A stretch of DNA of 64,000 bases from Podarcis gaigeae. Lineage: Eukaryota. Numbering within the stretch: the stretch's first letter is position 1; every line of letters starts with the position of its first letter. Location: NCBI GenBank assembly GCA_964106915.2, contig OZ066917.1. One strand, given 5' to 3'. Positions 10,761-38,552 of this stretch are shown piece after piece. The notes under the pieces were generated by a model. The model had not been told where the DNA came from. It was given only the letters and a program-made list of their open reading frames with translations, and searched no databases. The translations under genes were made by a program, and so were the position numbers.

Positions 10761-10763
<3 letters not shown>

Positions 10764-15238: not shown

Positions 15239-15332
15239 GGAACAAGATTTTCGGCTTGAGCTGCTGTGTTTTGATATCGGAGATCAGGAAGTTGTGAATA
15301 TACAGGAAGCGAGAGAGAGAGAGAGAAATTAG
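15239..15332 (+). CDS. SEPTIN10: Septin-10 (copy 1) terminal coding exon (K)EQDFRLELLCFDIGDQEVVNIQEARERERN*
   Basis: Pyrimidine tract + aag acceptor; block conserved in copy 2 (36158); resembles a recalled mammalian SEPT10 isoform tail (RFELLCID). Confidence 0.7.
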
Positions 15333-16840: not shown

Positions 16841-16846
16841 AATAAA
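16841..16846 (+). terminator. Polyadenylation signal of septin copy 1
   Basis: AATAAA inside ctgaataaaatatgtaaacctgttt, conserved in copy 2 at 38126; second AATAAA at 16864. Confidence 0.7.
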
Positions 16847-18272
16847 ATATGTAAACCTGTTTAAATAAACACTTCCTTTCCTCAAAACGGACTTACAAAT
16901 GTCCTTTCCAGGCCTGTGATAATGATAAGCTTTTGAATTATTCGTGGAAGCATTAAGCTTCATTCCCAAATATATTTTGAGAACCAGCTTGGTTTATAGA
17001 CATACCTTCCACTTGATCAGGCTTTGCTGTTCTTCAGCTTACATTACATGCCGCCAGTCGAGTGGAAACTAGAAATTTCCCAAAACAAATAAAACCAGGT
17101 TTGGTTCATGAGAACCCTGACAAACTGAGTTTGTAAGATGATAGATCAAGTGCCTTGGAGAGAGGTCTTCCTTCAGTTTAGCACTTTGCTAACTAAATTT
17201 GCAGAGCTGGCTGCAAAATCCTTCTTTGAACTCTGCAGTCCTGTGGTTGATCAACCAGAAGCAGGTTCTCTTGTGTTCAGTATGGGCAACGGGGCGGCTG
17301 ACTCCAAGTAAGTGCATAGAGGAGGGATGGGGGACCTGTGACTTCCAGGTATTGTTGGACTCCAACTCCTGTTGCTCTCAGATAGCATGGCCAAGTGGCC
17401 AGGGATAATTGACACTGTAGTCCAGCAACATCTGGAGGGCCACAGGTTCCCCATCATTTGTGTTTACAATTGCAGCCTAACTCGAGGCTAAGGAAGTACT
17501 GAGTAACCGTGTAGAATATTGTACTCTAAATGTAATCTTAACTTAATTTTAAAGTTATTGTACAACTTATTGCAGCCGATAGGTTTTTAACCTTTGTACG
17601 GTTCCTTTTTACTAATAAGCAAAAGCAGCTGTATCCGCAATCCTCGTAGATTTCTGCAGGACTTAAAAAACATGTATATATAAATGCATAACTTGGGAAA
17701 TAAACACACAATGTTATCCATAAGCTACACGAATCCCTTATTTTCTTGAGAAATACTGCTGTATGGTCCTCAAGCCAGCTTCCGTCTAATTTGAAAACTT
17801 AAGCAGAGGTGTTTACGTTTGAGACAGCCATTGCACACATGCAGATGACATCTCAGTGTATAGGAGGTTGGTTGGGAAAAACAAAATAAGGTAATGTGCA
17901 TTGAATGGATACATACCTGCCCCTTCTCAGATGTGTACGGTAATGTTAAAAGTTACTTGAGGCATGGGGGGCGGCCTACCTCATGTTTGAAGGTGCTAAT
18001 GTGCACATAGCCTAGATTTCAAATCTCATGTTGTTGAACTATTTTATCATAAATGCAATTTCTAAGAAGAAGACATGAAGGCAACAGAACCAATGAGGGG
18101 AGGGGTGAAAGAAACTGGCTGTTGTGGGCGGGGAATTGAGTGTGAAAGAATGGGAGAAGATATTATAGGAGATGGTTAAAAATATTCTGTTATTCTGAGT
18201 CTGAATTACTCTGAATCCGTCACAACGAGGTAATGGAGTATCCTTTCTTCTCCAATTTGGAATAGATATTGG

Positions 18273-20695: not shown

Positions 20696-20761
20696 AAGTA
20701 TAAGTCTGAGACGAGAATGAGAGCATCCTATTCACCAGTCAATAAAGAAGAAACAAGGAGT
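20696..20761 (+). CDS. Septin-10-like (copy 2) candidate N-terminal exon KYKSETRMRASYSPVNKEETRS (in-frame ATG at 20717)
   Basis: tttcccccccag|66 bp|gtgagt, phase 0-0, open frame, similar size and position to SEPT10 exon 2; ATG has A at -3. Confidence 0.6.
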
Positions 20762-21469
20762 GTGAGTAAAGTAATCGATGAGTATTCTCTTTGTATTGCT
20801 ATAGTACTACAGAAATAACAAAGAGTCTTGCGGGAATTCTGAAGACTTTCTGAAGAATTCATGCACTTTCAGAGACTACTGTCCACAATGGCTTATGCCA
20901 TAGTAAATTTATAAGGAGCCACAAGATGCTTCCCCCCTGCCCTGCTGCAACTGTCCAACATGGTTAAATGTTGTTACCTTTTTAGATAATGTACAATAAT
21001 TGTTTTTAAACCTTCTCGATATAAAAAAGAATGATAGAACATAATTTGGCATGCACTGTTTGAATTACAATTGTGGTCAGCAAAGTAGAAATTCAAATAA
21101 AATGTGAATTCACCCAAAATTAAATTGCAATTTGGTTTTGTTTGTAGAATTCTAACTATACTGTGTAACCAAAAAAAAAATCTATCAAAGGCTTTTTTCT
21201 TTCAGTGCTTTTTAGCAGTTGTACAATTTGTTGAGCAGAACAAAGTTAAAAAATTGCCATTGATTACTGTACCCTTCTTTTAGATCAGGGTTTCGCAAAC
21301 TTGAATCTCCAGCTGTTTTTGGACTACAACTCCCATCATCCTTAGCTAGCAGGACCAGTGGTCAGGGATGATGGGTGTTAACTTATTTAGACTTTGCAAC
21401 AACTTGCAGCCAACATAGTAGTAATAGTGCTGCAGCCTTGTATTCCAGTTTATATTATTCTTTCCACAG

Positions 21470-21581
21470 CAGAGTTCCCGACCCTTATCCTTGTCTGGTC
21501 ATGTTGGCTTTGATAGTTTACCAGATCAGTTGGTTAATAAATATATCCAACAGGGGTTCTGCTTCAACATTCTCTGCATTG
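21470..21581 (+). CDS. Septin-10-like (copy 2) exon [37 protein letters not shown]
   Basis: NAGNAG acceptor ccacagcag, donor G|gtaagt; SEPT6-group signature [13 protein letters not shown]; not in the ORF track. Confidence 0.93.
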
Positions 21582-22012
21582 GTAAGTAAAACAGCAGTTA
21601 GTAGTGAGTTATTTTATTTTAAAACTCATTACTATTGAAAAATGTGAAGGAGAGAAAAGTGACAAAGGTATTGCTCTTTTCCATTGGCATTGTACTAGTT
21701 CAGATAAACAGAATTCCTTAAGTGGGGTTAAGTTTTCCCTAAGCCCCAAAAAGTTTGCAGCAAAAATAGTAATGGAACAAATATTATATGCATCCTTTGA
21801 GGAAATCCCATAGCATAATGATCAAATACTGCTATCAAGGAATAAAAAAGAGACAATGGCCTCTCTGAACTAATTCCTTAGTTACAGCAAATGCCATTTT
21901 GCATTCCATCCCCCACCCCCTGGGGAATGTGAAAAAATTCAATTACCCTCATTGTGTTATGGTGAAATTTGTGTGGCATGTATGTAAATTTTTTATTTGT
22001 CTTTAATTGTAG

Positions 22013-22208
22013 GGGAGACTGGAATTGGGAAATCAACTTTGATTCATAGTTTGTTTAATAACAGTTTTGATTACCGTGTGTCAACACACTTTCAGCCAAA
22101 TGTACGACTTAAAGCTGAGACGTATGAGCTCCGGGAAAGCAATGTTCGATTGAAATTGACCATAATAGAGACAGTTGGATTTGGTGATCAGATAAACAAA
22201 GAAGATAG
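22013..22208 (+). CDS. Septin-10-like (copy 2) G1/G3 exon GETGIGKST...ETVGFGDQ
   Basis: ttgtag|196 bp|gttagt, paralogous to 1752-1947. Confidence 0.94.
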
Positions 22209-23963
22209 GTTAGTATCTCCTCACTTGAATAATGTCATATTAATTTGCCAAGTGACATGCCATCTAGGATCTGACATTTGTGTCATGTAGTGGTATTGAT
22301 AGGCTTATTGATTTCATTTTATTTAAATTTATTGACATAGTTAACACACCCACCCATAACCAGAGTTATTTAGAGAAATGAGGTAAACATTTCCAGATTT
22401 ATGACTTATCAGCAAGAATTTCACTTTATGTGTGCTGATCTGGAAAACAATTTCAGTTATCACTAAATTGACAGAATATTTTAGAAAAGGACTCCAGTTC
22501 TGATAACATTGTCTAGGACCCAGATACCTACTTCATTCTTACCCAAAGGCTTATGTATGCCCACTGCAACTTTGACTTTCTCCCCAACTGAGCAGCTGGA
22601 AGGAGTCTGCTGCCTGTCACATAGGAACAGCTGTTTGAAGAAAAACAAAGTGAATTGGCACGATCCAGTGATTCTGTTTATTTTATTTTAATTTTGTCTG
22701 TTGTATTTTGTTACTTTTATTTGCTTTAAATTGTATTTTTATGTCTTGTGAATTTTATTCACATTTTTGTGCATTGCCCTGGAATCTTTTGAGGAAGGGT
22801 CGTGAAGAAATACCTTAAATAAATACGGTAAATAAAGTTAAAGGAATGAAGGTCCTGTGATGTGTGGAACTGAAGCGCCATTGAAACAGTTATGGCCAAG
22901 GGCACTTGAAAGCAATTGGTTTGTGCTGGATTGTCAGTCATTCACAAATCTGCTCACCATTTCCCGTCTGGTGAAGCCCTTTCCCCTCTGGCCAGCGTGA
23001 CAAGCTGTCCCCACCAACTCAAGCTATGTGCTCCTGTATCCTCACTCTCATTTAACCTGTTCCCAGCACCATCTCTATTTCCCCCCTTCCCAGCACTTCT
23101 TTGTGCTAAGAACTGGTTGTGTGTGAACTAACTACATCCTTCCAGTGCAACCCCTTCTCTTCCACCCTGAGCTGAATATAATGGGGTTGTGTGGTGCTGC
23201 ATATTGGGCAACAATGGCAGCTTCCCTACCCATCATTGTCTAGTGCTGAGTGTCCATTTCCACAGGTCAGGAAAGCTGGAACTTGGAGCTAGGCTGAGTT
23301 CTGGGGCTTCAGCAGTGAAGAAACTCAGACAACCAACTTACACTGACGCTGAAGGTTCAAGCTGTTTCTGACTCCTCTCAGACCATGATCCAAGCAGTTG
23401 TTTCTGTGTTCTTCCCACTCCTCCCAAGTAGCCCTTGTGCAGCTAACTAAGTACTTAGGCAACGGCTCTGATGTTCTTCCCTGGCTTACTGTCTCCTCTG
23501 TTCTTGTGGCCCTGGGGGAGATGAGGGGAGGTGTGAGAGCTGGGCAGCTGGGGTCAGGACTGTTATGGACAGGCTCTGGGTCTGCCTCCTGGTGACCCAG
23601 CAACCAGTGAGAGCTGGCGAAACCAGCAGCCAATCAGGAGAGTGTGTGTGTGTGGAATTCAAGTGAGATGCTGACAGTTTAAGAGTCATATAAGGACTTT
23701 TCTGTCTAGGTGGGCAGATGGCATCTCTGACTATCTGGAGTGGGCTCAGATAGTGATTATCTGTCAGCAGGGACAGTCTGAATTGATTCTCAGAGATTGG
23801 GATTTTGCTGTCAGCGGGAGAGGGACCAACTATCAGTGTGGGCCTGGTATCTGTGCTTGACCAGTGGGAGAGCTAGACAGCTTTGACAATGATGCTTGCT
23901 AAAAGCAATTCAAATGTATATAAGCCATTCAGAGTTGGGCCATTTGTCTTCCCTTTAGAACTA

Positions 23964-24205
23964 CAGTGGTACCTCGGGTTACATACGCTTCAGGTTACAT
24001 ACCCTTCAGGTTACAGACTCCGCTAACCCAGAAATATTACCTCGGGTTAAGAACTTTGCTTCAGGGTGAGAACAGAAATTGTGCTCCGGCGGCACAGTGG
24101 CAGCGGGAGGTCCCATTAGCTAAAGTGGTGCTTCAGGTTAAGAACAGTTTCAGGTTAAGAACGGACCTCCGGAACGAATTAAGTACTTAACCCGAGGTAC
24201 CACTG
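23964..24205. mobile_element. Tc1/mariner(pogo)-type MITE, family A
   Basis: TA TSD, perfect TIR cagtggtacctcgggtta. Confidence 0.88.
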
Positions 24206-25423
24206 TAGTTAGAAAACATACTTTGCTGCATTGCAATTGATATCAACTACCTTTACCCTTTTCTTTTCTGCATTAGGAACTTTATAATATATTATTCCTT
24301 ATAAACTATTTCTGGTGTTTTCTGATAAATTGTCCAGCTGATTGGCAACAACCTTACATAACTACAATCTGCTTGATAGTTGAAAGAGCTGCAATCAGAT
24401 ATCCTGATTTGCTTAATGTCATATCTCCAGAGAGGTGACCCTAAATTAAAATCCTTCAAGACTCCCTGTCTCAAACTTGGGAGATCCACTGCCAGCCAGT
24501 GCAGGCAGCATTAAGCTAGATGGACCCATGGGTCTTACTCAGTATGTAAGGCAACTTCCTATGCTCCAGGTCAGGGTAAAGCTTGCACCCCAACACTGGA
24601 GCTGGAGAGAGAGGCGGTAGAAGCAACTGCTTGTTTCTCACTTTAAGCAATGGGAAGAGAAGAATGGGCTGTTACAGCAGTCACAGAGCTGGGAGGACAG
24701 ATTGGGGGGCGGGGAGGCAACGAGGAAGCAGCATGGAGTCCCATCTAAGCTCAGGAAGAAGTTAGGGGGTCATTTATGTGATGCTGTGTTTTAAAGGTGC
24801 TCTGCAAAACACCGAACTGTATGGAAGATCACTTGCCCTTTTGATCTTCTTCCTCTTCTTCACACCTGTCAGTGCTATCCCACTCCTCCAGTTAGTATGG
24901 GCTGGAAAGGACGGGGATGCATTGGTGAGTGAGCACTGCTAAGTGCGGAGAGGTGATGTTGATGGTTTAGATTCACAAGCATCCTGGAGAGGAGGTTGGA
25001 AGAGCAGTGCAACATCGCCCTTCTCAGTTTGGAGCTTGGCAGGGAGATAATGGGATAACAGTTGATGGCACTGAGCTTCAGAGGTGCTTGCCTCCAAAGT
25101 TTTGTGTGAGGTCAGTAAAACACCCAGTTATTTTTCGGCAGGGTTGAGGCAACTCCCGATTTGGTTACCAAGGCCAGCCAAAATGTATGGACTTCTGTGG
25201 ATGTGCCCTTGTTTTGGTTTAGGATGATAATATTCAGGTCAAGAGGCTTTGTCTTTTTATGAGCATATACTTTAGAGAATAATTTTTAAGAATTTCGCTG
25301 AATTTATACTAATGTCACTGCTGTTTTACTGTCCCTTGGCAATTTGTGTTTATCAATGTATTAGAGTTACGGTAAACTCAACCTTTGTCCTCTTACATCA
25401 AATATTTTCCCCCTTATCTGCAG

Positions 25424-25610
25424 CTATCAGCCAATAGTGGATTATGTAGATGCACAGTTTGAAGCCTACCTCCAGGAAGAGCTGAAAATTAATCGTTCCT
25501 TGTATAATTACCGTGATACTCGTATCCATGTGTGCCTCTACTTTATTTCACCCACAGGGCATTCCCTTAAAACTCTTGATTTAGTAACCATGAAAAATCT
25601 TTCTAGGAAG
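25424..25610 (+). CDS. Septin-10-like (copy 2) exon [15 protein letters not shown]...KNLSRK
   Basis: ctgcag|187 bp|gtaaga. Confidence 0.94.
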
Positions 25611-26308
25611 GTAAGATATTAAAACCAGAATTCATTCAACTTCAGTATTTTATGTCGTGGTTTGATAAGGCTCTAACTTGTGCAAGATATTCCCTGCTAA
25701 TTAAAATAAATCCTCACCTTGCTTTTAAGATCTTACAACGTTAAGTAAAACAAGCGCTACTCAGAAGGTGAGAAAAATCATTTTAAATTTTAAGTACAGA
25801 GTCTTTTGCAGATACTTAAATAATAAATCACAGTGGTTCAGCCGACTATTTAAATTTTTGACTTTTATAAAGCAGCAACGTCAGTAAGTAAGTTAAAACT
25901 CTAGTACAGTTATATAGGCAGAATTACCTTCTTATTCATTTGCCAGTCGTCACTTTAGTCTTGTCTGGTACCTATCTTCCAATGTGGCCTAGTTCTAGCT
26001 GAGGATGTAAACCAGAGGTGGGGCCCTCCAGCCAGAGGACCACATTCCCTTGTCAATAGTTTTCCAGGAGCCACATGGCAAGAGTAAAGGATGTGACTTT
26101 TAGAAGGCTGTTTTCCAACCACATAAATTTAAAGGTCTCTACGTATCTCTCTATCCAGGCAAGCAAGTGCCATAACCAGTCTCCAAATACAACTTCCGTA
26201 AAGGGTATGACGCTGGAAGGGGCTGAGGCTATCAACCTATGCCTAAGCTGTACCTCTCTTTGAGGTGTACCTTAAATTATTTTCAGGATTTTAAGGCAAC
26301 CTGGGTTT

Positions 26309-26647
26309 AGGTAAAGGGACCCCTGACCATTAGGTCCAGTCGTGGCCGACTCTGGGGTTGCGGCGCTCATCTTGCTTTATTGGCCGAGGGAACCAGTGTA
26401 CAGCTTCCGGGTCATGTGGCCAGCATGACTAAGCTGCTTCTGGCGAACCAGAGCAGCACACGGAAATGCCGTTTACCTTCCCGCCGGAGTGGTACCTATT
26501 TATCTACTTGCACTTCGTGCTTTCGAACTGCTAGGTTGGCAGGAGCAGGGACCGAGCAACGGGAGCTCACCCCGTCGCGGGGATTTGCACTGCTGACCAG
26601 CAAGCCCTAGGCTCTGTGGTTTAACCCAAAGCGCCACCCGTGTCCCT
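26309..26647 (-). mobile_element. Sauria SINE
   Basis: Reverse complement of the Sauria consensus; flanking ctgggttta duplicated. Confidence 0.9.
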
Positions 26648-27876
26648 AATCTGGGTTTAAATGGAGTTTAAATCAGTAGCTCATTTTATAAACATGTGAT
26701 TTGACAATGTTGGCCATGGACTAGGTCGCTTTCAGTCTTACCCTTTCCCCTTCACACAATCACCTCTACCCCATAATTCCACCCAACTCTTCCACTTGCA
26801 TTTCCATTCGACTATAGGTGGATAAACTTTAATGCACAGGTCCTTTTTCAGCTAAGGGCCGTTTCCCCTTCTAGGCAGCTTTCTGAGGGCCACTTAGCAA
26901 TGGTGGATGGGGCCAGAGGCAAAAGGGGATAGAGGAGCAACAGATTTTATCTTTGTAAAGTAGGTTAGTTTCCGCACACACTTGCACACCCCTCTTTCCT
27001 CCATCCAGATAATAATGAAGCATTATTGAAAGAGGTTCCCCAACCTTACTTTAAGGGCAGAAGATTGGTTGCCTTAAAAATCCTAATCAGGTATTTTGAA
27101 TGTGCGGAAGACTTAAATCTGACCTTTTTTTTATTTAGTTTGTGCTGAGTCAAGGGAAGACGTATAGAAATGTGTACAGAGTACAAAAACCTTATACTCC
27201 AAGCAGCAATATAAACAGTCACTCCTATACCTTTAGCCAAATGGCAGGCAGACAGGAAAGCTAGTTCTCTGCATGATTCATACCATATCAAGGGTTTTCA
27301 CTTGCTTACATTTGCCAATAGTTCTTCAGAAGCTCTAAAATGCTGTCAGCTCACAAGGGATATGTTTGGTTTGTAAACGAGGAAGGCAAAAGAAAAGGCA
27401 CATCCAGAAACAAGAAACGTATTTCACAGTAGCTAGCAGTACGTTTTGTTGAAGTACAAAAAGCCTACAATTGCTTGCAAGGGAATCATTGTGGAAATCG
27501 TTGCCTTTTTGTTAAGTAATTCATTATACATAAAACATTACAGTATACAAAAAGCAATACATCGATGCCCTAGTAAAACAAACAAAAAAACCACTTTGTG
27601 ATAACTGTTTTTGATGATCATGTTTTATTCTGGTAAAGTTTTCACAGTATTTCTGGTAAAATGGAAAACTGAGCTATACGGATAAATAGAAACTGCAAGT
27701 TTATTATTATTATTACTATTATTATTTTAGCAAGTTCATGGTACTGAAGAGCTATTTTGCTACTCTGTTTAAAAAGCACCTTGCTTTTTCATTGACATGG
27801 TAATTGGTGTTTAAAAAGTTCAGATTATTTGCAGATTTGGCTTGTATGAGTACAATACTTCTTATTTCTTTAATAG

Positions 27877-28038
27877 GTGAACATCATTCCCCTTATAGCC
27901 AAAGCTGATACAATTTCTAAAACTGAACTACAGCAGTTTAAGGTCAACATCATGAGTGAACTGGTCAGTAGTAGACTCCAGATATATCAGTTCCCAACAG
28001 ATGATGAGAGCATTGCTAACATTAATGCTAACATGAAT
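27877..28038 (+). CDS. Septin-10-like (copy 2) G4 exon [11 protein letters not shown]...
   Basis: taatag|162 bp|gtaagt. Confidence 0.94.
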
Positions 28039-28210
28039 GTAAGTACTTCACTACAAGTATTAGAATGTAAGTATTTTAATGGGATTTCACCTTATTTTTG
28101 ACAGGTGTGATGGTCTTTCATGTAATTAGGCTACATGTTGTATATATTGCATTTTTCATTTATTCTTAGTGTTGACAGCAATACAAATTTATTTACTTCC
28201 TGTTTTGCAG

Positions 28211-28307
28211 GCACACTTGCCATTTGCAGTAGTGGGCAGTTTGGAAGAGGTAAAAGTTGGAGACAAAACAGTAAAAGCTCGCCAGTATCCTTGGGGCGTA
28301 GTGGAAG
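28211..28307 (+). CDS. Septin-10-like (copy 2) exon [13 protein letters not shown]...YPWGVVE
   Basis: ttgcag|97 bp|gtaaag. Confidence 0.94.
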
Positions 28308-29450
28308 GTAAAGAAGAGTTTGAACTCTCACTTTTTACAGAATTAGTTTCCTAAGATAGTCAGCAGTGATAGTAACATTGCATGGTTAATTGTCTGCTTC
28401 TCAACTGATAAAGTTCACATTTTGCAGTATCTTTATAGAACTGCTTTCTTCTTTTTGAAGCCTAGTGAATCACGACATCTTTTTGTCAGATTTGTGAACC
28501 AGGCAATATTCTACGCTTTGTGATTTAAACTGGTGATCTGTAGCAGTACCATGAGTCTACTTTCCCAGAACTGTTCCTTTTTCACAGGCACATTCTGCAA
28601 CACGTCATCAACACAATAATATTGCATTAGTGATGGATTTAGACAGGACAGGACAGGACACTCCATGTATCAACCAGTCTGCTTTATTAGTTGCACAGTG
28701 ATACTTCCCCAATATTATTGTATTGTTGCCATCTGGAGGGGCACTCTTGCACTGTACATCAACAAAAGTGAAACAGCACACAGAACATTCGTGATCTAAA
28801 AAGGCACAAGATTTCAGCAGGAAATTATGGGACGCACGCTTACCAGCCACAAAGCAAAAAGGCAGCTTGTCAGCAGTCTGGATTGGCCACAGCAGCCGGA
28901 GCTTGCTAGGATTAGTTTAAGGAGAGCTGTTGCCTCAGAATTATGCTGAAGCCTTCTGAGACGTCATAAAGGCTGGCCCACACCCTCTTATTAGCCCTAC
29001 CCACTCTGAGTAACTGATCTATCTTTTAAAGGACTATTCTGCAAATTATGGCGTTTATGGTGTGGGGGTGGTGAGGGATGAATTGGAGGGGTGTTGTCTG
29101 AGCTGGAGAAGTCCAGTGAGGGCATATAATCTGTCCTGGATGGTGAGGAATTGGGATACCTCTTCTGCCTTCCAGTACCTCCCATCTGCCTCTGAGCTGG
29201 CAGATGCATTTGGAACGGGAATTTCCTGATCCCATCTTTGCAACTGCTACCCATCAGAAAGCCTCTCCTTGTGGTTCAGGGGACACTTGCAAAATGTATG
29301 AGATGGATGGGAAAGACTTCCGCTGCTCAATACCCCCCCTGCAATCCCTCACCCCGCAATCCCGGCGTGAAAGGGCTTTTGGGGGGTGTTTCCTGCATCC
29401 TGTGGTAAATTCCAATAGGATAGAGCTGATATCTTATTTTATTTCATTAG

Positions 29451-29607
29451 TGGAGAATGAGAACCACTGCGATTTCGTGAAACTCCGGGAAATGATGATT
29501 TGTACAAATATGGAAGACTTGATAGAACAAACTTGTTCTGTTCATTATGAACTGTACCGGCAGTATAAACTGGAAGAGATGGGCTTCCGAGACACTGATC
29601 AAATCAG
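29451..29607 (+). CDS. Septin-10-like (copy 2) exon VENENHCDF...GFRDTDQI (12 bp shorter than copy 1)
   Basis: cattag|157 bp|gtaaga; in-frame loss of ENKP. Confidence 0.93.
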
Positions 29608-30333
29608 GTAAGAGAGTGAGCCTTTCCTATGTTTTTAATAGTGAAACCAATTCCCAACATGGCTTTTGTAATTACTTCTCTGAAGGTATCTTGAATCTTA
29701 AGTGTGTAATTAAAACTGTTTGCAGACCCCTTAGCCAATTTATGGGGGTGCAGGGGGGGGGGGGAAATGGGCTATTGCACCGACTTCCACTAGTGGGGGC
29801 CCTTTGTTGAATCTGACCCCATAGCTTAGCTCCAAGTAGCATGGCAACAGCACGATTGGGGGAGGAGCGAAGTGGCTGCAGTTTTCCTTTTGGATCCCCA
29901 CGTGCTTGTTCTTTCTGACTTAAGTCTAAGCCATGTTTTGGCTTTGTGTTATATGAGTACAAGGCTTCTGAAAGCTTTATAAGTGTACTCCACATGCGTA
30001 GTTGTTTGTAAGTGCTAAATACAAATCTTAGGTGGTATTCAGTTAAGACTTACTCAGAATAAGGCCCATTAAAATTAATGAACAGGACTAACGATTGAAA
30101 TGTACCCTGAGTAAGTCTTAGCTAAATATTACCCATCATTTTAAAAATTAAATACATAATTGTTTCAGTGTTATATTTCCGTAAGAAAAAAAGCAAATTC
30201 CTTTAACTTTTAGAAACTTGGAATGGTATCAGTTTCTTTCTGTGAGCCAGGATAATATAAAATTGGGTTCCTTAGACAGAACTGTGGAAGCACACTACAA
30301 CTTGATAAATCTGTATCTTTGTTTTGTTTTTAG

Positions 30334-30369
30334 GATTCCAGATTCCAAAAAGACAACTCATAGAGAAAG
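30334..30369 (+). CDS. Candidate 36-nt in-frame micro-exon of copy 2, (R)IPDSKKTTHRE(S)
   Basis: tctttgttttgtttttag|36 bp ending AAG|gtatgt; phase 2-2 and stop-free in the septin frame. Confidence 0.5.
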
Positions 30370-30705
30370 GTATGTTGCCTTATAGCGTAGAATGAGGGAA
30401 TTAAAGTTTTTTAAATCCTGTCTCTCTCTCTGTGTGTGTGTTTTAGAAAGAGACAGCTTGGTCTTACAGGAACCAATAGTGACATGATCCCAGTACTGAT
30501 TTGGAACTATTATTGAATTCCCTCAAGTGCAACTCAGAATGTCTCCAGCTGTGTACTAATTCTTCAGCTTACAAATATGGGTAGGGGACCATAGACCCCG
30601 GAGAGAGGCATTTCCTGTCAGATTAGACACTATCTAGATCAGGTGGACAAATAGCCTAACTTAGTATAAGGAGTTGCCTATGTTCTTAAATACCAATTAA
30701 ATTGG

Positions 30706-30707
30706 TT

Positions 30708-30767
<60 letters not shown>

Positions 30768-30786
30768 TTTTTCTTTCTTTCTTTCT
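30706..30786. repeat. (TTTC)n microsatellite
   Basis: Direct observation. Confidence 0.95.
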
Positions 30787-32875
30787 CATTGATGTTCTAA
30801 ACAGATATGTGAGATGCGTGCTGGCCTCAAAACAGACTTTATTTACAGTAGTCGCTGCAGTACTAACATTTAACTTCTGCAATAGAACATGATCTGTGAC
30901 TAGAATAAATAATAGTTCTGTAAAAACAGGGAAGTTGACAATTAACTTGCCTTAAATGTGTTGGTAAGATCAGAATAAAAAAAGGGGACACAATCTCACC
31001 TTGGACATAACCTTTTTGAAAAGATGCTGCTGTTCTTCTCCCTGTTGAACAGTAAGGAGTTGAAGACTTACCTTCCAATGTGAGCTGGTAAATTGTTTTC
31101 TTATCCCCCCTGCGAGATGAACTTACATTTGGCTCTACCTCCACTCATCTAAGGCACATCTATGCCACTCTGAATCCAGCACTGGTCTTTGGTCTCCCCC
31201 CCCCCCCTTTTCCAATACTTCTTGCAGCCTACCTTTACACATGCCAGAAGCATGACATTAACCTGGATGGATTCATTGGTGGTTAGGGGTGTAGCCTTAT
31301 AATTGCCATAGCAGCCAACCAATAAACATCTTGCATCGCAAGTTGTTGCTAGAAACGGGATGAGCCAGCTGTTCCTCCCAAAGTTGCTTCTCTAGGAAAA
31401 GTTATATGCCTGACTAAAAAGGAATGGGTACCGATTTGCAAAGGGGTAGCTTCATCTGCTTATATCCAGTTAGAAACTGAACTTGAAGAAGCTGTAACTG
31501 GTTTTGTTATCTCAGTTTAAAAGCAGGGAAGAAGCACATGCAGCAGTTAGACTTTGTGCAATAAGATGATATCACCTAACAGCAAACCTAGTTAGGGTGG
31601 AAAACGGGGTGGAAAATCTGTGGTCCTCCAGATGTTGCTTTGGGCTGTGGCTGATGGGAGCTGGACACCCAACAACATCTGGAGGGTGGCAGGTCTCCTG
31701 CCCTTGGTGTAAAAAGTTACAACAATGACATCTTAACACCTGGGTTCCTTTAAAAAGAATTAGAATGCTTTCTAAGCGAAAGGCACCTTTACTCCTTAAC
31801 AGATGCCAAGAGTGAGATGGTTGGAAGACCTCTGGCTATTGACATTGTATGTATTACAGTGAGATTGGAATCGGCTTTCAACTGTAAGATCAGCAAGTTT
31901 TACTCTTTGTCTGGTTCAGAGTAGTCTCTTTACTGGAAAGTGACTTTGTAGAGAGAATATCCAGTTGTCAGTGTGCCAAAAAGGAAGGACACATCCAGCA
32001 TTCTGAGAGGAGGCTTAAAAAACTGATAGAAGAGATTCTAGACTGGCATGTAAAGAGGAGAAGAATGAGAAAGCCAGGCAAACAATGAGAAAATGACATC
32101 TTCTTTTGCCGTCAAACATAATCACTACAGATTTTGAAATGTGGCAATAATTCCAGTGGGTACATTAGTTGATGTAGATAGATAGATAGATCTGTTTGGT
32201 GGTCTGCAAATGCACAGTGATAAAAGAACTGAATTTTCTCTGCTGAACAGGAAAGTGTGGAATAACACTTGCTTGACTTAATGTTGTCTAATCTCACAAA
32301 GAAATCAGAATAAATGCACATTAAATACCCTATGACTATGTTGTCTAATCTCTTCATAAGCAAATCAGGCTGAATGCTTATTAAACAAGTTATCTGGAAG
32401 TGACCAAATTTTTCTCAAATTAAGTTCTATTTCAATTGATTAGGTATACCCCCAAGTTAGATGCATTTAGGATCAAAAATAAAAGCCCAGGGCCACCTAT
32501 GCTTTGTCCACTTCACCATGATTAATTTGTTGCCCTGCATTCTATTCATAGCATCACTGCTTGTCCCGTCCTAGGAGCTTTTAGAACCAGTTTATAAATT
32601 TAACAAAAGGAAACACTGTGAGTGTGGTGAGACAGCAGACCACACCTGTTCTCATGCCCCCCCCTTAATTGCAAGGTTTGCAAGATGAACCAGGTGTAAC
32701 TCTCCAGTGCACACCTTCTTGAGCAAAACATCTCCTTGAACTTTTAATCTCCCTGTGAACTTTCACAGTCTCTCATGCACAGGAAAGCTGGTCAAATGTG
32801 GTTGGGTTTTGTAAATAAAATGGGTGAATGCGGCCAGCTCTGATTGAAGGCTATTTTACATTTTATGATCCTCAG

Positions 32876-33008
32876 TCTGCAGGAGACTTATGAAGCTAAG
32901 CGGCTTGAATTCCTTAACAGTTTACGGCAAAAAGAAGAAGAGATGAGGCAAAGGTTTGTTCGGAGGGTCAAAGAGAAAGAAGTACAGTTGAAAGAAGCTG
33001 AGCGAGAA
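32876..33008 (+). CDS. Septin-10-like (copy 2) coiled-coil exon [12 protein letters not shown]...KEAERE
   Basis: cctcag|133 bp|gtaagc. Confidence 0.94.
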
Positions 33009-33935
33009 GTAAGCCCATCTCTCTTACAGTTCTTGATCTGGTTGTAGTGGTAGCTTGAAGACATTATGTGGAGCAGCAGAATAAGATGGCTAGAGTCTAG
33101 TGAAGAATGCACTGGAGAGAAAGGTGTGCATTGTACAGCCCTTCTTTGGAGATCATGGCTGGAATTCCATCATGAGTCAGGACCAGGGAGACTTGCAACT
33201 AAATATTCAGCTGTGTCCCAAATATGTCTCCTCCCCTGGTTTGTTTGTGTGTGTCCACATGCGCATGGTACCTCTCTCTTCTTCCCTTCCCAGTGTCTCG
33301 CAATGAGTGGCAGAGCCCTTCCTCCTCTTCCTTGTTCACACAGCTGGAGCTGATTGGCTAGGCACATTCAGCATTAAGGAGAAGGTTATCAGATTCTGAT
33401 TTGGTTGTTGATGTGATTTATTTATAGGAGGTTAGGATGGTCTCTACTGCAGTGTTGGTGTGCTGGGTCCATCCATTTCTTTTTCTGCTCCTATTTGCTA
33501 CGGTTGAGAACTGGAATGCCACACATTGCATAATGCAAATGAGATAACTGCCATACTAAAAAGACGATGGCCAGAGTTGAGATGTGTGTGAAGTAGAAGC
33601 CAGAGGCAGATGGAAGCCAGAGAGATAGAGCCATGTCTGCTTTCTGCTGGAATCCAAGGCTGTGGCTATGGAAGGAGCAAAACCCTTTTGGGGTACTAAT
33701 GTTGTGAGCTCCCCAGGTTATATTTATGTGTAAATAAACCATGTATCATAAATACACCACAGTCTTGGCTGTCCCTCATTCTGAGGAAACAGCCTTTCTC
33801 AACCTGTGGGTCCCCAGATGTTGTTGAACTACAACTCCCATAGCCCCTTGCTAGCAAGGCCAGAGCTCAGGGATGATGGGAGCTGTAGTCCAACAACATC
33901 TGGAGACCCACAGGTTGAGAACCGCTGGCCTAGAA

Positions 33936-34188
33936 CATGGGTAGGGAAACTAAGGCCCAGGGGCTGGATCTGGCCCAATCACCTTCTAAATCCGGCCCAT
34001 GGACAGTCCAGGAATCAGTGTGTTTTTACATGAGTAGAATGTGTGTTTTTATTTAAAATGCATCTCTGGGTTATTTGTGGGGCATCAGGAATTCATTCAT
34101 CCCCCCGCAAAAAAAATATAGCTCGCCCCCCCCCAAGGTCTGAGGGGCAGTGGACCGGCCCCCTGCTGAAAACGTTTGCTGACCCCTG
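33936..34188. mobile_element. Non-autonomous hAT element
   Basis: Perfect 8-bp TSD gcctagaa; inverted related copy at 36905-37138. Confidence 0.8.
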
Positions 34189-35762
34189 GCCTAGAATATC
34201 ACACTGACGGGGGTGGTGACCCCCATATTGAGGGGGGTTGGTGTCACGTTACCCGTCCTGCCTCTACCTGGCATGCCAGCCCTCGCCTCTTGGCAGTGGT
34301 GAGCGAGGAGGGTGAAAATCACCCTCCGCACCTCTTGCCACCCTGGCGGGCCAGCGCTTGCCCAATGGCAGCAGGGAACGCAGAGAGTGAAAATCACCCT
34401 CTGTGCCTTCTACCCCCACTCAGTAGGCCAGTGCTCAGCCGTCTGCATGGAGAATGCTGAGGGTGAAAATCATTCTCTATGCTGGCTTAGCTGTGTACAA
34501 GAATCATTGTGCAGTGCTGCCCAGCTGAGGAGAGAAGCATAAATGCTGCCACAACCCTTCTGCTTCTCTTCGTCTCCCAGGTCAGACCTGACCCAGGCAG
34601 AGGCGGAGTGAGCGGAGCACAGGCTGTGCACCCAGGGGCGGGGCTAGCCACCCATGGGGGCGGGGCAAGTGTCCCAGGGAGGCACCGCGAGTGGCCCCTC
34701 AGGGATGACACCCACTGCACCCCTTCCTCTGCCAGTGGGGCCCAGAAGCAGAGCTGCAGCTTGGTGCAAAGGAACTGTACAGCCCTGTACAGGAGAGGGG
34801 GGTGGGGGAGGGGATGGTGGGGGAGAAATATTGGGTACGGGACTCAGCCCCCTGCCCAGAAATATTGAGGGAGCTGAATCTCCATCCACCCCTATTGTTG
34901 GTGCCCCTGCGCACTGCTCAGACATTGGGGTGGTGTGCAGCGATATTAGATGGTGAAATAGGCATCTTATCTGTGGGGGACTCCATTTTCCTATCCAGCT
35001 GTTCAGCACACAAGGATCATCAAGTTCATGTGGCAACTTGCTGTTGATTTAGATCAGAGTTCCAGGAAACAATAGAAACAGCCTTTCATAATTGCATAAT
35101 GATAGGGGTGCCAACTTGAATAAAATATTGGGATATCCCAGGTAAGCCCTGCCCTGCATAATTGATCCTGAAACACACACACTATTTGAATGGCAATGTC
35201 AATCAACTGGGGTGTGTGGCAGCTCTCAAATATTTTATGGTGGGGTGGGGGTCGAAGGGACTTCAGCCCCTAAGAGCTGGCTCCTATGCCTAATGACATC
35301 ACAAGTTGAACTAACATAATTTACTGAAATCAGTCTCCTTTGATTTAAAAGTAAATTGTTGACCAGAAGCTTACAGTATAACTTATAGTATCATATGCAT
35401 ATTGAAAGATGGGCTAATTAAGGCAGTAACCCGTGTTGTTCAATTGGGAGATGTTTGATCCGTTCTTCATTTAGCAAGAAATGGGAAGTTAACTATGGGA
35501 TGCTCTGAAAGAATGATACCCCCGTTGAAAAGCTTTTATAAGTAAAACTGATGTCCACATTTGTCATTATAAAGAAATCAGTTCCAAGTTACTATAAGAA
35601 AAGGTTTTAGCGCGCTTGTGTCAATAAGCGAACTATGAAAATAGTAAGTGAAAATAAGGAAATCAGTCTCTTTTTTTGACCTTGTGATTACTCAAGATGG
35701 TATATTAAGTGCTAGGCTACCACCTTGTGGCAGAAGTGATACCTTTTTGTGCTTGACTTTAG

Positions 35763-35953
35763 CTACAGCTGGAGTTTGAACATTTAAAACAGCTTGATCA
35801 AGAAGAGAGAATGAAATTGGAGGAGAAAAGAAGACTCCTGGAAGAAGAAATTATTGCATTCAATGACAGAAAAGCTGCCGCAGAAATAATCCAAGGGAGG
35901 CCACTGCCCCCTACGCCCACTGTTGGGTATAAAAAAGATAAGGATCGTAAAAA
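35763..35953 (+). CDS. Septin-10-like (copy 2) exon [11 protein letters not shown]...[18 protein letters not shown]
   Basis: ctttag|191 bp|gtaagt, open frame; not in the ORF track on +. Confidence 0.93.
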
Positions 35954-36157
35954 GTAAGTAATCAATTCCATAAAATTTTAGGATTTGGTTTTTAGGACAG
36001 GGTACACTGTCCAGTTCAGATAAATATTTTAAACAGTATAAATGAATCAGGTACCAAATATGGGGGGGGGGGGAGTTTTGTATTAACTTGTTCAAAACTC
36101 TTACTGATACTATCAGACACTTTTACGAGAACTCTTCTTTTTAATATTTGTCCTAAG

Positions 36158-36284
36158 GGATCAAGGTTTTCGGCTTGAGCTCCTGTGCTTTGATGTCAGA
36201 GATCAGGAATTTGTGAATATACAGGAGGAGAGAGAGAAAGAGAGATTAGAAAGGGAACGAGCCCACAGGGAGCACCATGAATAG
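36158..36284 (+). CDS. Septin-10-like (copy 2) terminal coding exon (K)DQGFRLELLCFDVRDQEFVNIQEEREKERLERERAHREHHE*
   Basis: cctaag acceptor, paralogous to 15239. Confidence 0.7.
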
Positions 36285-36904
36285 AATTTGGAAGCAGTTT
36301 GAAAACGTTATATGGTTAAGGTATGTTATGTTTAAAAGTCATAGAAAACAGATCCATATGGCCACAGTGTGGTTTTTTTCATTCCTAGGAATATTCTGAA
36401 ATTCACAAAAGTCTTTGTGGTTTTGTGGCGATGACAGAAGTTATTACAGAATTATAAACAACCTCAAACAAACATTGTGGAGAAGGGGGTTCTTGTTGCG
36501 CTAACTGTTCTGCTCTTATTCTTAAGGAATAACTATGCTAAGCAATTCATTTTAATGCTAGAAATCTGCTTTTAAATGATGACAAGGTCATTAAATGACC
36601 AGAAATATCATCCTCTCAGTAGTGACTGTTGGGCAACATAGAACAATTTCCACAAACTTGCACAGCAGAAATCTGATTGCACTATGTGACTTTCTTTTCT
36701 CCTACCTCCAACCTCTTGCACGCCCCTATTTTTTTTTTCAGAGGAGTGACCCCCCCCTGCTGAGAATAGTGTATATAAAAGGACATTTCTTTTAAGTTGC
36801 ACTAAACTGAGCAGATTTTGGACTGCAGGGGGACAGAAGGAGAAACTCAATGGAATGGACAGACACCAATTCACACTGCATTTATTCTCACCTGTGAATT
36901 AATT

Positions 36905-37138
36905 CAGGGGTCAGGAACCTTTTTCAGCTGTGGGCCAGTCCACCATCCCTCAGACCATGTGGTGGGCTGGACTATATTTTGGAAAAAGAAAAAAAAAGAA
37001 CGAATTCCTATGCCCCACAAATAACCCAGAGATGCATTTTAAATAAGAGCACACATTCTACTCACGTAAAAACACGCTGATTCCCAGACCATCCGCGGGC
37101 CGGATTGAGAACCCCGGGCCTTAGGTTGCCTACCCCTG
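36905..37138. mobile_element. Non-autonomous hAT element in the copy-2 3'UTR
   Basis: cagggg...cccctg termini, TSD aattaatt/atttaatt. Confidence 0.75.
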
Positions 37139-38125
37139 ATTTAATTCAGCCTTGAAATACATTCATGGAAATTACTAAATATTCAGTTATCAGGGCACAT
37201 TCCGAAGGGATGTGATGCAAACACTTTGCTGAAACTAAGCAGGTTTGAGTTTGATCAGTGACTGGATTGGAATCTGTCAGGGAAACCCATGTCCACCACC
37301 AACGAAAGAAAGGTAGGAAGAATAGCCACATATTAAATAAATACGATTTAGCAACTACTTTTAATACTTCAGAAGCCTGTGTAAATATTTTAGTCATTTG
37401 TTGCTATCACATCAGGGAGAAGGCTAAGCTGTAAGCCTTCGTGTGCCGTTGAGTTCTGGATGAAAGGACCGTTAAACCAAGGGACCTTCATTGTAGTCTG
37501 AAGTGATTCAGTCAAAGAAAGTCTGTACCATGGTGATATTTCTCTACCTTTGAGTCAGTTCAAGTCCTCTCCATTTGATATTCATCAAAATAAATATAAA
37601 TACATGGAAGACAAAAGCTTTAATACTTTATGAATAGTCTTTGCTTTCTGTGGAGAAAAGGTATACCTAATATAACTCCTTCTGTTTCAGCGTTGGCTTT
37701 ATGTGAAAGAAGAATAAATACAAGAATAAATTATTCACAGTTCTCTATGAAGAAACTTGGGTCACCTTCCCCCTTTTTAATGCAAGTTAACTTGAAAACT
37801 GACTCCTGTTTAACAAAGGGAAAAGTATATTAAAATGTATAATTAGTATCACATAGTGTACTGTAGGTTGTTGTATTAAAATATATAAAATGACAGTTCT
37901 TTTAAGCTATTGATGTGCATTTAAACTATATACCTGTGGCCAAGCTGTACTCACTTTAAGTGCTGTACCTAAGATCACTGTGCCACAAAAGAATTTTTAT
38001 TTCTGTTATGAATACTCTTAGCATAGAAATGATTATATATTGCAACTGTTTTAAAGAACTGGTGCTTCTTGAATGTGTTAACTGCATATCAATGAATATC
38101 CCCATTTGAAACATTTATTGAACTG

Positions 38126-38131
38126 AATAAA
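38126..38131 (+). terminator. Polyadenylation signal of septin copy 2
   Basis: AATAAA in a context conserved with 16841. Confidence 0.7.
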
Positions 38132-38552
38132 ATATGTAAACCTGTTTCAGAAAACATTTTCTTTTCTGAAAATGTTTTTTTTATAAATGCACATGCTAGC
38201 TCTGTGATAAGCTTAAATTAAAATGGACCATGATTGCCTTTGCAGTGGCAGTATTCATGCAAACATATGGTTTACTTGAAAATAGATATTGAGAAGTATT
38301 GAGAAGGGAATCTGGTGTTCCAAGGAAAGTCAAAACCCCACTGCACTAGGGCAAGCCCCCTTGTACGAGGTTAGGCCCAGGAGTTCTTTGCAAACAGATC
38401 CCTGCAGACAATCCATAAATCTGCAGAGTGACATTCTAAATATGAATGTGCCCTTTAAAAAGTGCCTCGAGAAAGTTCAAATGGTGAGTGGTGCATATCT
38501 TTAAAGCAATGGCAAGAGTTCTTAATGACCTTCCTTGCTAAGTTGCTGAAAT

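What the first reader, a model, noticed from the sequence alone, without database searches (positions are those of the whole stretch)
20696..38131. Intact tandem duplicate of SEPTIN10 - a lineage-specific extra SEPT6-group septin
Seen: a second full exon set follows copy 1 head-to-tail. All splice sites are GT-AG with matching phases and there are no stops (468 aa from ATG 20717). The 3'UTR and poly(A) context are conserved. Hand count gives 64 differences in 374 aligned aa (~83% identity), while the introns are heavily remodelled. Known: in human a single SEPTIN10 abuts SH3RF3. Inference: an open frame over this much divergence implies selection. Still-alignable intron blocks argue for a duplication within squamates rather than in the amniote ancestor.
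Basis: partly seen in the sequence, partly recalled or inferred. Interest (0 to 1): 0.8.

Follow-up and report, generated by a model that had tools for sequence, protein, structure and literature searches.

The report
Second SEPTIN10 gene in lacertid lizards
The window holds a real, intact, spliced and selectively constrained second copy of the cytoskeletal gene SEPTIN10, directly behind the first; lacertid lizards and a worm lizard share it, and public annotation already lists it under misleading names, so it is a solid but fairly ordinary lineage-specific gene duplicate.

Summary
Copy 2 (20717-38170, + strand) follows SEPTIN10 copy 1 head-to-tail. It has 11 coding exons, all ten introns are GT..AG, and there are no stops. 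Copies 1 and 2 differ at exactly 64 of 374 aligned residues (dN 0.090, dS 0.51, dN/dS 0.18).

It is a working gene:
- Contigs of an RNA-like public run join E1-E2-E3-E4 exactly at the predicted sites.
- Orthologues are intact in Podarcis raffonei, Zootoca and the amphisbaenian Rhineura, with dN/dS 0.07-0.24.
- 15 substitutions mark all copy-2 orthologues.

Trees place one copy-2 clade (100/99) inside squamate SEPTIN10. Only Lacertidae and Rhineura show a second gene, in tandem in both. The duplication therefore predates their split, and the ML tree puts it within squamates. It is not an orthologue of the SEPT14-like mammalian sequences.

The gene is not unknown. RefSeq already models it as "septin-10 isoform X5", "septin-8-A(-like)" or "septin-10-like". 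I found no paper on it. This scan has no finding of it on other DNA. Function as a SEPT6-slot filament subunit is inferred. Interest is modest.

The parts
1752..15041 (+). Copy 1 = SEPTIN10 proper, 3' seven coding exons in the window: 1752-1947, 3968-4154, 7822-7983, 8455-8551, 8649-8817, 13261-13393, 14847-15041. The 5' exons lie off the left edge.
   Evidence: Exon and splice mapping. The 378-aa translation is 99.7% identical to Podarcis muralis septin-10 P0186.
15234..15326 (+). Copy 1 alternative last coding exon (approximate limits), homologous to the copy-2 exon at 36158-36284.
   Evidence: tblastn of P0185 residues 455-485 and P0195 residues 559-587.
15042..16887 (+). Copy 1 3'UTR, ending after the AATAAA at 16841.
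   Evidence: Aligns with the copy-2 3'UTR. Poly(A) signal context shown.
20717..20761 (+). Copy 2 exon 1 with the ATG (MRASYSPVNKEETRS). The 5'UTR starts somewhere near 20650-20690, and upstream alternative first exons are possible.
   Evidence: Donor GTGAGT. The joint 20761>21470 is seen in contigs of runs X1 and X2. RefSeq P0286 has the same start. Longer N-termini in P0341 and P0343 extend upstream in frame.
21470..21581 (+). Copy 2 exon 2 ([20 protein letters not shown]...NILCIG).
   Evidence: Joints 20761>21470 and 21581>22013 in run X1.
22013..22208 (+). Copy 2 exon 3: P-loop GETGIGKST and the switch/G3 region ETVGFGDQ.
   Evidence: Pfam Septin E = 2e-11. Joints to exons 2 and 4 in run X1.
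25424..25610 (+). Copy 2 exon 4.
   Evidence: Pfam Septin E = 1e-20. PDB best hits are SEPT11/8/6. Joint 22208>25424 in run X1.
27877..28038 (+). Copy 2 exon 5 (G4 motif AKAD; copy-2 signature [17 protein letters not shown]).
   Evidence: Diagnostic residues 200, 204, 213 and 214.
28211..28307 (+). Copy 2 exon 6.
29451..29607 (+). Copy 2 exon 7, 12 nt (4 codons) shorter than in copy 1.
30334..30369 (+). Copy 2 36-nt cassette micro-exon (R-IPDSKKTTHRE-S), in frame.
   Evidence: Splice sites TTTTAG / GTATGT. Present in RefSeq P0286. Conserved in P. raffonei, Zootoca and Rhineura.
32876..33008 (+). Copy 2 exon 8 (start of the coiled coil).
35763..35957 (+). Copy 2 exon 9 (coiled coil). The stop TAA at 35955-35957 overlaps the donor AAAAA|GTAAGT at 35953/35954.
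36158..36284 (+). Copy 2 alternative last coding exon (DQGFRLELLCFDVRDQEF...HREHHE*).
   Evidence: Conserved in P. raffonei, Zootoca and Rhineura.
36285..38170 (+). Copy 2 3'UTR, with the poly(A) signal AATAAA at 38126.
   Evidence: Aligns with the copy-1 3'UTR. Same AATAAAATATGTAAACCTGTTT context.
63170..63337 (-). Context, not part of the gene: terminal SH3-domain exon with stop of the convergent neighbour, an SH3RF family member (SH3RF3 by synteny).
   Evidence: Pfam SH3_9 E = 1.6e-14. Best solved match is SH3RF1, E = 8e-31.

Best explanation
Window 20.7-38.2 kb encodes a functional paralogue of SEPTIN10, called copy 2 here. A tandem, head-to-tail duplication of the whole SEPTIN10 gene created it in the gap between SEPTIN10 and SH3RF3. 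This happened before the ancestors of lacertid lizards and the amphisbaenian Rhineura split, and after squamates had begun to diversify according to the best tree. Shown: copy 2 has its own first exon and ATG, 11 coding exons with canonical splice sites, and two in-frame optional exon choices (a 36-nt micro-exon, and a terminal exon reached through a donor that overlaps the stop). Shown: it is spliced as predicted in RNA-like public data. Shown: after duplication its protein changed about three times faster than SEPTIN10, fixing 15 substitutions shared by all orthologues, several at sites invariant in SEPTIN10 from mammals to lizards. Since then it has evolved under purifying selection. Inferred: it keeps the P-loop, the AKAD G4 motif, the septin-unique region and the long C-terminal coiled coil. 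By the Kinoshita rule it should therefore occupy the SEPT6-group position of septin hetero-oligomers as an alternative, probably tissue-restricted, subunit. Its AT-rich, CpG-poor start region fits a tissue-restricted promoter.
For: Structure and intactness. Family: Pfam Septin on four exons; PDB best hits SEPT11/8/6; the nearest database proteins are all septin-10. Expression and splicing: run X1 contigs join 20761>21470, 21581>22013 and 22208>25424 at GT..AG with 0-2 mismatches. Coverage lies on the exons, and the introns are empty except for repeats. Run X2 also shows the E1-E2 joint. Orthologues: RefSeq 480-aa models of P. muralis, P. lilfordi, Lacerta agilis and Zootoca are 97.5-99.0% identical to the window's model. 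The tandem arrangement is seen in P. raffonei L001, Zootoca L003 and Rhineura (L004 then L002 on one chromosome, 21.9 kb apart, same strand). Selection: copy 1 vs copy 2 dN/dS is 0.18. Copy-2 orthologue pairs give 0.07-0.24, against 0.04-0.06 for SEPTIN10, and no stops occur in any exon of four species. Phylogeny: the copy-2 clade has support 100/99 in the protein tree and 100/100 in the codon tree. It nests in non-gekkotan squamates (95/80) and is sister to lacertoid SEPTIN10 (87/79). 15 substitutions are diagnostic of copy 2. In Rhineura, dS between the two copies (0.285) is smaller than dS of either copy to Hemicordylus SEPTIN10 (0.42-0.44). CpG o/e is 0.2-0.3 around the start. The Kinoshita rule and SEPT6-group membership of SEPT10 are from PMC8801916.
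Against: The public runs are recorded only as 'RNA?', a guess, and they are contigs. They give no tissue, strand, level or transcript ends. Strong support comes from one run (X1), weaker support from X2 and X10. The AU test does not reject copy 2 lying outside all squamate SEPTIN10 (p = 0.23). Lacertid copy 1 vs copy 2 dS (0.48-0.52) is about as large as dS to Hemicordylus (0.50-0.55), so the date is soft. Absence outside Lacertoidea rests on annotated proteomes and one 10-kb flank (Hemicordylus). Teiids could not be checked at the DNA level. Nothing here tests assembly into filaments or nucleotide binding.
Confidence: 0.85

Rival explanations
1. Copy 2 is not an independent gene. It is mainly a block of alternative downstream exons of one long SEPTIN10 transcription unit. 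Read-through transcripts from the SEPTIN10 promoter splice copy-1 exons onto copy-2 exons and give hybrid septins.
For: RefSeq models of P. muralis (P0185, P0184, P0177, P0178) and P. raffonei (P0189, P0193, P0191, P0192) join copy-1 exons up to E7 or E8 to copy-2 E8/E9 plus the copy-2 terminal exon. In P. raffonei the 'septin-10' gene range spans both copies (L001 10001-94584). All exon phases are identical, so any such join stays in frame.
Against: Contigs start in copy 2's own exon 1, with its ATG, and run E1-E2-E3-E4. Newer RefSeq builds separate copy 2 as its own gene (L001 78220-94584 with a 480-aa product; L003). The G-domain exons E2-E7 of copy 2, which the chimeras skip, are just as constrained. 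Hybrids may exist in addition, but they cannot explain conservation of the whole copy.
Confidence: 0.08
2. The duplication is much older (stem squamate, lepidosaur or amniote, possibly the same event that gave mammalian SEPTIN14). Copy 2 was then lost in most lineages, and its nesting within squamates is an artefact of gene conversion or long branches.
For: The AU test does not reject copy 2 outside squamate SEPTIN10 (p = 0.23). Lacertid copy 1 vs copy 2 dS is about 0.5, comparable to dS between lacertid and cordylid SEPTIN10. Copy 2 carries E at the position where, from my memory of human SEPT14, SEPT14 also has E (residue 105).
Against: The SEPT14-like representatives P0024 and P0010 group inside placental SEPTIN10, far from copy 2. 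The ML tree nests copy 2 within non-gekkotan squamates, next to lacertoid SEPTIN10. Intron and UTR blocks still align at 70-75%. Rhineura copy 1 vs copy 2 dS of 0.285 is below dS to Hemicordylus. No second SEPTIN10-type protein was seen in annotated geckos, skinks, cordylids, anguimorphs, iguanians, snakes, tuatara, turtles, crocodile or birds.
Confidence: 0.06
3. Copy 2 is a neutral, decaying duplicate, or an assembly artefact such as an uncollapsed haplotype.
For: None beyond the general frequency of such artefacts.
Against: 14% nucleotide divergence in the CDS and remodelled introns. The same tandem pair occurs in independent assemblies of four other genera. Frames are open and dN/dS is 0.07-0.24 over a dS of up to 0.32. 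Spliced contigs exist.
Confidence: 0.01

Closest known systems
SEPTIN10 (the upstream copy 1, and septin-10 of other vertebrates)
   Same: Same exon-intron structure and phases. Same alternative terminal exon reached through a donor that overlaps the stop. Same chromosomal neighbourhood (SOWAHC - SEPTIN10 - SH3RF3). 83% amino-acid identity. Same G1 and G4 motifs and coiled coil.
   Different: Separate first exon and N-terminus (MRASYSPVNKEETRS...). A 4-codon deletion at the end of exon 7. 15 fixed substitutions absent from 22 sampled SEPTIN10 proteins, including K204N, G213R, V214L, N252D and Q266E at otherwise invariant sites. dN about three times higher. CpG-poor start region.
RefSeq/GenBank models of the same gene in relatives: P. 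muralis XP_028583845 ('septin-10 isoform X5', later 'septin-8-A isoform X1'), Zootoca XP_034972598.2 'septin-8-A', Lacerta agilis XP_033003577-85 'septin-8-A-like' / 'septin-10-like', P. lilfordi CAI5771989.1, Rhineura XP_061485374.1 'septin-10-like'
   Same: Orthologues: 97.5-99.0% identical in lacertids and 84% in Rhineura. Same exons, including the micro-exon and the terminal exon.
   Different: Only the name differs. 'septin-8-A' is misleading, because every close relative found is a septin-10 and the gene sits in tandem with SEPTIN10. No SEPT8 sequence was put in the tree.
Mammalian SEPTIN14
   Same: Also an extra SEPT6-group septin derived from the SEPTIN10 lineage. In the tree the SEPT14-like fragments sit inside mammalian SEPTIN10 on a long branch. 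From my memory of the human sequence, it has E before TVG(F/Y)GDQ, as copy 2 does.
   Different: An independent event in a different lineage. In human it is not adjacent to SEPTIN10 (general knowledge, not tested here). That P0024 and P0010 are SEPT14 rests on my recollection only, because the library gives no names.

Membership tests
Septin family, SEPT6 group (SEPT6/8/10/11/14) | Septin-type GTP-binding domain (Pfam PF00735) | tested here: met
   Exons 3, 4, 5 and 7 each hit PF00735 above the curated cut-off, with E-values from 2e-11 to 1e-20, and together cover profile positions 12-275 of 280.
Septin family, SEPT6 group (SEPT6/8/10/11/14) | G1 P-loop GxxGxGKS/T and G4 AKAD motifs intact | tested here: met
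   GETGIGKST in exon 3 and IAKAD in exon 5 of the translated model.
Septin family, SEPT6 group (SEPT6/8/10/11/14) | Closer to SEPT6-group members than to the SEPT2, SEPT3 or SEPT7 groups | tested here: met
   Exon 4 against PDB gives SEPT11 3e-31, SEPT8 9e-31 and SEPT6 3e-29, against SEPT9/3/7/2 at 1e-16 or weaker.
Septin family, SEPT6 group (SEPT6/8/10/11/14) | Long C-terminal coiled-coil extension | tested here: met
   Exons 8-9 are homologous residue for residue to the SEPTIN10 C-terminal region, with no gaps or stops. No coiled-coil predictor was run.
Septin family, SEPT6 group (SEPT6/8/10/11/14) | Lacks the catalytic switch-I threonine, so it binds but does not hydrolyse GTP | not tested
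Septin family, SEPT6 group (SEPT6/8/10/11/14) | Occupies the SEPT6 position in hetero-hexamers and octamers (Kinoshita rule, PMC8801916) | not testable with these tools
   Needs co-expression or pull-down with SEPT2, SEPT7 and SEPT9.
SEPTIN10 clade (as a lineage-specific paralogue) | Falls inside the vertebrate SEPTIN10 clade in a tree, and sits at the SEPTIN10 locus | tested here: met
   Nested within squamate SEPTIN10 (100/98 for squamates, 95/80 for non-gekkotans). In tandem downstream of SEPTIN10 in the window, P. raffonei, Zootoca and Rhineura (with 32).
SEPTIN14 orthologue | Groups with mammalian SEPT14 to the exclusion of SEPTIN10 | tested here: not met
   The SEPT14-like representatives P0024 and P0010 sit inside placental SEPTIN10, while copy 2 sits inside squamate SEPTIN10. 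Caveat: their identity as SEPT14 is recalled, not given by a tool.
SEPTIN8 (the name 'septin-8-A' given by RefSeq) | Closest relatives are septin-8 proteins | tested here: not met
   Apart from three long invertebrate or fish entries, all 120 best G-domain hits of P0286 are named septin-10 or SEP10, or are unnamed 'Septin' or 'hypothetical protein' entries at 78-86% identity. None is named septin-8.

The most novel reading that the evidence does not exclude
Copy 2 is a specialised, tissue-restricted SEPT6-slot subunit that lacertoid squamates evolved in parallel with mammalian SEPTIN14, for example in testis or ciliated cells. The parallel includes the same N-to-E change beside the G3 motif. 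The tandem pair additionally makes regulated hybrid septins, with a SEPTIN10 G domain and a copy-2 coiled coil, by read-through splicing. This would be a natural experiment on how septin filaments gain new paralogue-specific properties.
Probability: 0.2. Interest if true: 0.5.

Novelty: new member of a known kind. Interest (0 to 1): 0.3.

Why it matters
Septin filaments are built from interchangeable paralogues, and how new paralogues arise and specialise is mostly known from mammals. This is a dated, independent second case of a SEPTIN10-derived extra subunit. It is still in its original tandem position, with orthologues in two squamate families. It shows a burst of protein change followed by constraint, at residues that are otherwise invariant. 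That gives septin biologists a short list of candidate specificity-determining sites. It also gives annotators a concrete correction: "septin-8-A" and "septin-10 isoform X5" in lacertids are a distinct SEPTIN10 paralogue. Beyond that it is an ordinary retained tandem duplicate.

Tried and rejected
1. Joined spliced model. Database searches used single exons by reference or stored protein ids. Joined translations were built only inside scripts, for local alignment, trees and dN/dS.
2. Look-ups that failed. The look-up of encoding contigs found nothing for Varanus P0416, Tiliqua P0152, Anolis sagrei P0410 and A. carolinensis P0195. The tool records only a gene's longest product, which probably explains this. 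The planned DNA-level synteny survey therefore shrank to Hemicordylus. There, no second exon set lies in the 12 kb after SEPTIN10's last coding exon. That flank is too short to be proof.
3. AU test of "all squamate SEPTIN10 form one clade without copy 2". It was inconclusive (p = 0.23).
4. Naming the SEPT14-like fragment P0024. The Atlas search gave only generic septin clusters.
5. Two paper searches found nothing that links septins to lacertids or to a reptile SEPTIN10 duplication.
6. SEPT14 orthology and the RefSeq name septin-8 were considered and rejected.

Full report
**What is in the sequence**

A self-comparison of the window shows a colinear, same-strand series of matches between 1680-16887 and 21947-38172. 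Identity is 80-88% at exons and 66-75% in scattered intron and UTR blocks. Six-frame reading and splice mapping give two full sets of septin exons.

Copy 1 is cut by the left edge of the window. It contributes seven coding exons (1752-15041), an alternative terminal exon near 15234-15326, and a 3'UTR ending after the AATAAA at 16841.

Copy 2 has eleven coding exons:
- 20717-20761 (with the ATG)
- 21470-21581
- 22013-22208
- 25424-25610
- 27877-28038
- 28211-28307
- 29451-29607
- 30334-30369, a 36-nt micro-exon
- 32876-33008
- 35763-35953
- 36158-36284

Its 3'UTR runs to about 38170. All ten introns are GT..AG with the same phases as copy 1. The window has no N runs.

The 468-aa product is reproduced exactly by the isoform without the micro-exon. 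With the micro-exon the product is 480 aa. If the last donor (AAAAA|GTAAGT, which overlaps the TAA) is not used, it is 427 aa.

The hand count of 64 differences in 374 aligned residues is exact, and CDS nucleotide identity is 85.7%. Both 3' ends carry the same AATAAAATATGTAAACCTGTTT context.

**What it is**

Four copy-2 exons hit Pfam Septin above threshold. Exon 4 matches solved SEPT11, SEPT8 and SEPT6 far better than the other septin groups. A whole-library HMMER search with exon 4 returned a skink septin-10, P0001. Word searches seeded from stored protein ids then showed that every close relative is a septin-10.

Copy 1 is 99.7% identical to Podarcis muralis septin-10, so the window comes from a wall-lizard-type lacertid. 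On the minus strand at 63170-63337 lies a terminal SH3 exon with a stop. Its best solved match is SH3RF1. SOWAHC lies on the other side of SEPTIN10 in P. raffonei, Rhineura and Hemicordylus.

It was built only inside scripts, for local alignments, trees and dN/dS.

**It is already annotated**

A search with the copy-2-derived tail of a chimeric RefSeq protein and the cluster look-up found copy 2 in public annotation:
- P. muralis XP_028583845, first called "septin-10 isoform X5" and now "septin-8-A isoform X1"
- Zootoca vivipara "septin-8-A"
- Lacerta agilis "septin-8-A-like" and "septin-10-like"
- P. lilfordi and P. raffonei, as "septin-10" isoforms
- Rhineura floridana, an amphisbaenian, as "septin-10-like"

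The 480-aa lacertid models are 97.5-99.0% identical to the window's model, and the Rhineura model is 84% identical. They use the same first exon, micro-exon and terminal exon.

The "septin-8-A" name is not supported. None of the 120 best G-domain hits is named septin-8, and nearly all are septin-10. Two paper searches found no publication on the gene.

**Synteny**

The tandem pair, same strand, is present in three other assemblies:
- P. raffonei: L001, with copy 2 called as a separate 480-aa gene at 78220-94584.
- Zootoca: L003, where the tail of SEPTIN10 ends 6.4 kb before copy 2.
- Rhineura: SEPTIN10 at 52,860,010-52,907,039 and septin-10-like at 52,928,910-52,952,494 of one chromosome.

In the cordylid Hemicordylus there is a single exon set. 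Nothing septin-like lies in the 12 kb after the last coding exon. Four other look-ups failed.

**Phylogeny and date**

In a 47-protein ML tree (LG+C20+F+G4), copy 2 of five lacertids plus Rhineura forms one clade (100/99). Lacertid copy 1 groups with Rhineura SEPTIN10 (96/91). The two clades are sisters (87/79). All of this nests inside non-gekkotan squamates (95/80) and squamates (100/98).

A codon tree of eight sequences again gives a 100/100 copy-2 clade, with a near-trichotomy at its base. Fifteen substitutions are shared by all copy-2 orthologues and absent from 22 SEPTIN10 proteins. They include changes at sites invariant in SEPTIN10 from mammals to lizards: K204N, G213R, V214L, N252D and Q266E.

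So copy 2 arose once, before Lacertidae and Rhineura split. In Rhineura, dS between the copies (0.285) is smaller than dS of either copy to Hemicordylus (0.42-0.44). That puts the event within squamates.

Two cautions apply. Lacertid copy 1 has a raised dS, so lacertid copy 1 vs copy 2 dS (about 0.5) is not informative by itself. The AU test does not reject a position just outside crown-squamate SEPTIN10 (p = 0.23).

Unnamed fragments that I recognise as SEPT14-like (P0024, P0010) sit inside placental SEPTIN10. Copy 2 is therefore an independent, parallel duplication and not a SEPT14 orthologue.

**Selection**

Pairwise Nei-Gojobori estimates:

| Comparison | dN | dS | dN/dS |
|---|---|---|---|
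| Copy 1 vs copy 2, window | 0.090 | 0.51 | 0.18 |
| Copy 2, window vs P. raffonei | – | – | 0.07-0.11 |
| Copy 2, window vs Zootoca | – | – | 0.09-0.13 |
| Copy 2, window vs Rhineura | 0.057-0.067 | about 0.32 | 0.18-0.21 |
| SEPTIN10 (copy 1) orthologue pairs | – | – | 0.04-0.06 |
| SEPTIN10, lacertid vs Rhineura | 0.018 | – | – |

Every exon, including the micro-exon and the alternative terminal exon, is open in all four species. Copy 2 is therefore constrained. The constraint is about three times looser than on SEPTIN10, and much of the change is concentrated on its stem (branch lengths).

**Expression**

The one run search, made with the last exon plus 3'UTR, listed small contig sets flagged "RNA?" and large DNA-like sets. 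I laid four of the small sets on 20300-25700 at 92% likeness or better, which excludes copy 1.

Run X1 gave contigs with 0-2 mismatches that join 20761>21470, 21581>22013 and 22208>25424, all at GT..AG. One 936-nt contig continues 613 nt beyond exon 4. Coverage falls on the exons only, apart from two high-copy repeats. Run X2 also shows the E1-E2 joint and covers exon 4, and X10 covers exons 3 and 4 thinly.

This is the signature of spliced mRNA that starts in copy 2's own first exon. The runs are contigs of uncertain library type, so tissue, level and transcript ends remain unknown. An X2 contig has 24 unplaced letters before 20687. P. lilfordi and L. agilis models have N-terminal extensions. 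Upstream alternative first exons are therefore possible.

**Mechanism**

Shown: the gene is intact, spliced and constrained, and it keeps all the sequence features of a SEPT6-group septin.

Inferred from the Kinoshita rule (PMC8801916): its product takes the SEPT6-group position in septin hetero-oligomers as an alternative subunit.

The start region is AT-rich with CpG o/e of 0.2-0.3. This hints at a tissue-restricted promoter. That is a suggestion only.

**Verdict**

The gene is a lineage-specific (lacertoid) SEPTIN10 paralogue. Annotation pipelines already predict it, under inconsistent names, but I found no paper that describes it. It is a new member of a known kind and of modest interest.

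Noticed in passing
window 8817/13393 (copy-1 donors) to 32876/35763 (copy-2 acceptors); proteins P0185, P0184, P0177, P0178, P0189, P0193, P0191, P0192: RefSeq 'septin-10' isoforms of P. muralis and P. raffonei are chimeras. Copy-1 exons up to E7 or E8 are joined in frame to copy-2 E8/E9 plus the copy-2 terminal exon. They are either real read-through hybrid septins or gene-prediction artefacts.
   Followed up: partly
window 30334-30369: The 36-nt micro-exon noted separately as 'new' (s1-701551) is already in RefSeq copy-2 models (RIPDSKKTTHRE in P0286). It is conserved in P. raffonei, Zootoca and Rhineura. Anolis SEPTIN10 isoform X6 has a similar 12-residue insert. No counterpart was detected in copy 1 of the window.
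   Followed up: partly
window 15037-15043 and 35953-35959: In both copies the stop codon of exon 9 overlaps a strong donor (AAAAA|GTAAGT). Without splicing the protein ends ...DRKK*. With splicing it continues into an alternative terminal exon (copy 2 at 36158-36284, copy 1 near 15234-15326). RefSeq also has a copy-1 ending ...DRKN-SGFM, whose exon I did not locate.
   Followed up: partly
It therefore dates to the copy-2 stem. That position varies among SEPT6-group members (from memory).
   Followed up: partly
window 63170-63337, minus strand: A terminal SH3-domain exon with a stop, whose best solved match is SH3RF1 (E = 8e-31). It is the convergent downstream neighbour, presumably SH3RF3.
   Followed up: partly
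window 21295-21379 and 23962-24207 (also 583-700, 1287-1532, 3626-3707, 16076-16181, 33814-33916): Interspersed repeats inside copy-2 introns reach summed contig depths of 10^4-10^5 in the RNA-like runs, with many variant contigs. They are expressed SINE-like families. The 21.3-kb element also occurs in inverted orientation elsewhere in the window.
   Followed up: no
window about 9400-9580 (copy-1 intron 7): The Lerista edwardsae protein P0001 ends in a read-through tail (..LAVPILPSCALSSFPFLLSLQL..). This resembles an ORF in copy-1 intron 7 (..LPVPVLPSCALSSFPFLLSFRL..), and Phrynosoma P0217 also hits 9497-9578. It may be a conserved alternative 3' exon or retained-intron product of SEPTIN10.
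   Followed up: no
tree (P0024, P0010): Unnamed fragments that look like SEPT14 nest inside placental SEPTIN10 on a long branch. This suggests SEPT14 is a mammal-specific SEPTIN10 derivative. Their identity rests on my memory of the human sequence.
   Followed up: no
codon comparisons: Lacertid SEPTIN10 (copy 1) has a higher synonymous distance to everything (0.43-0.55) than Rhineura SEPTIN10 or copy 2 do (0.28-0.44). This points to a local rate or composition shift in lacertid copy 1.
   Followed up: no
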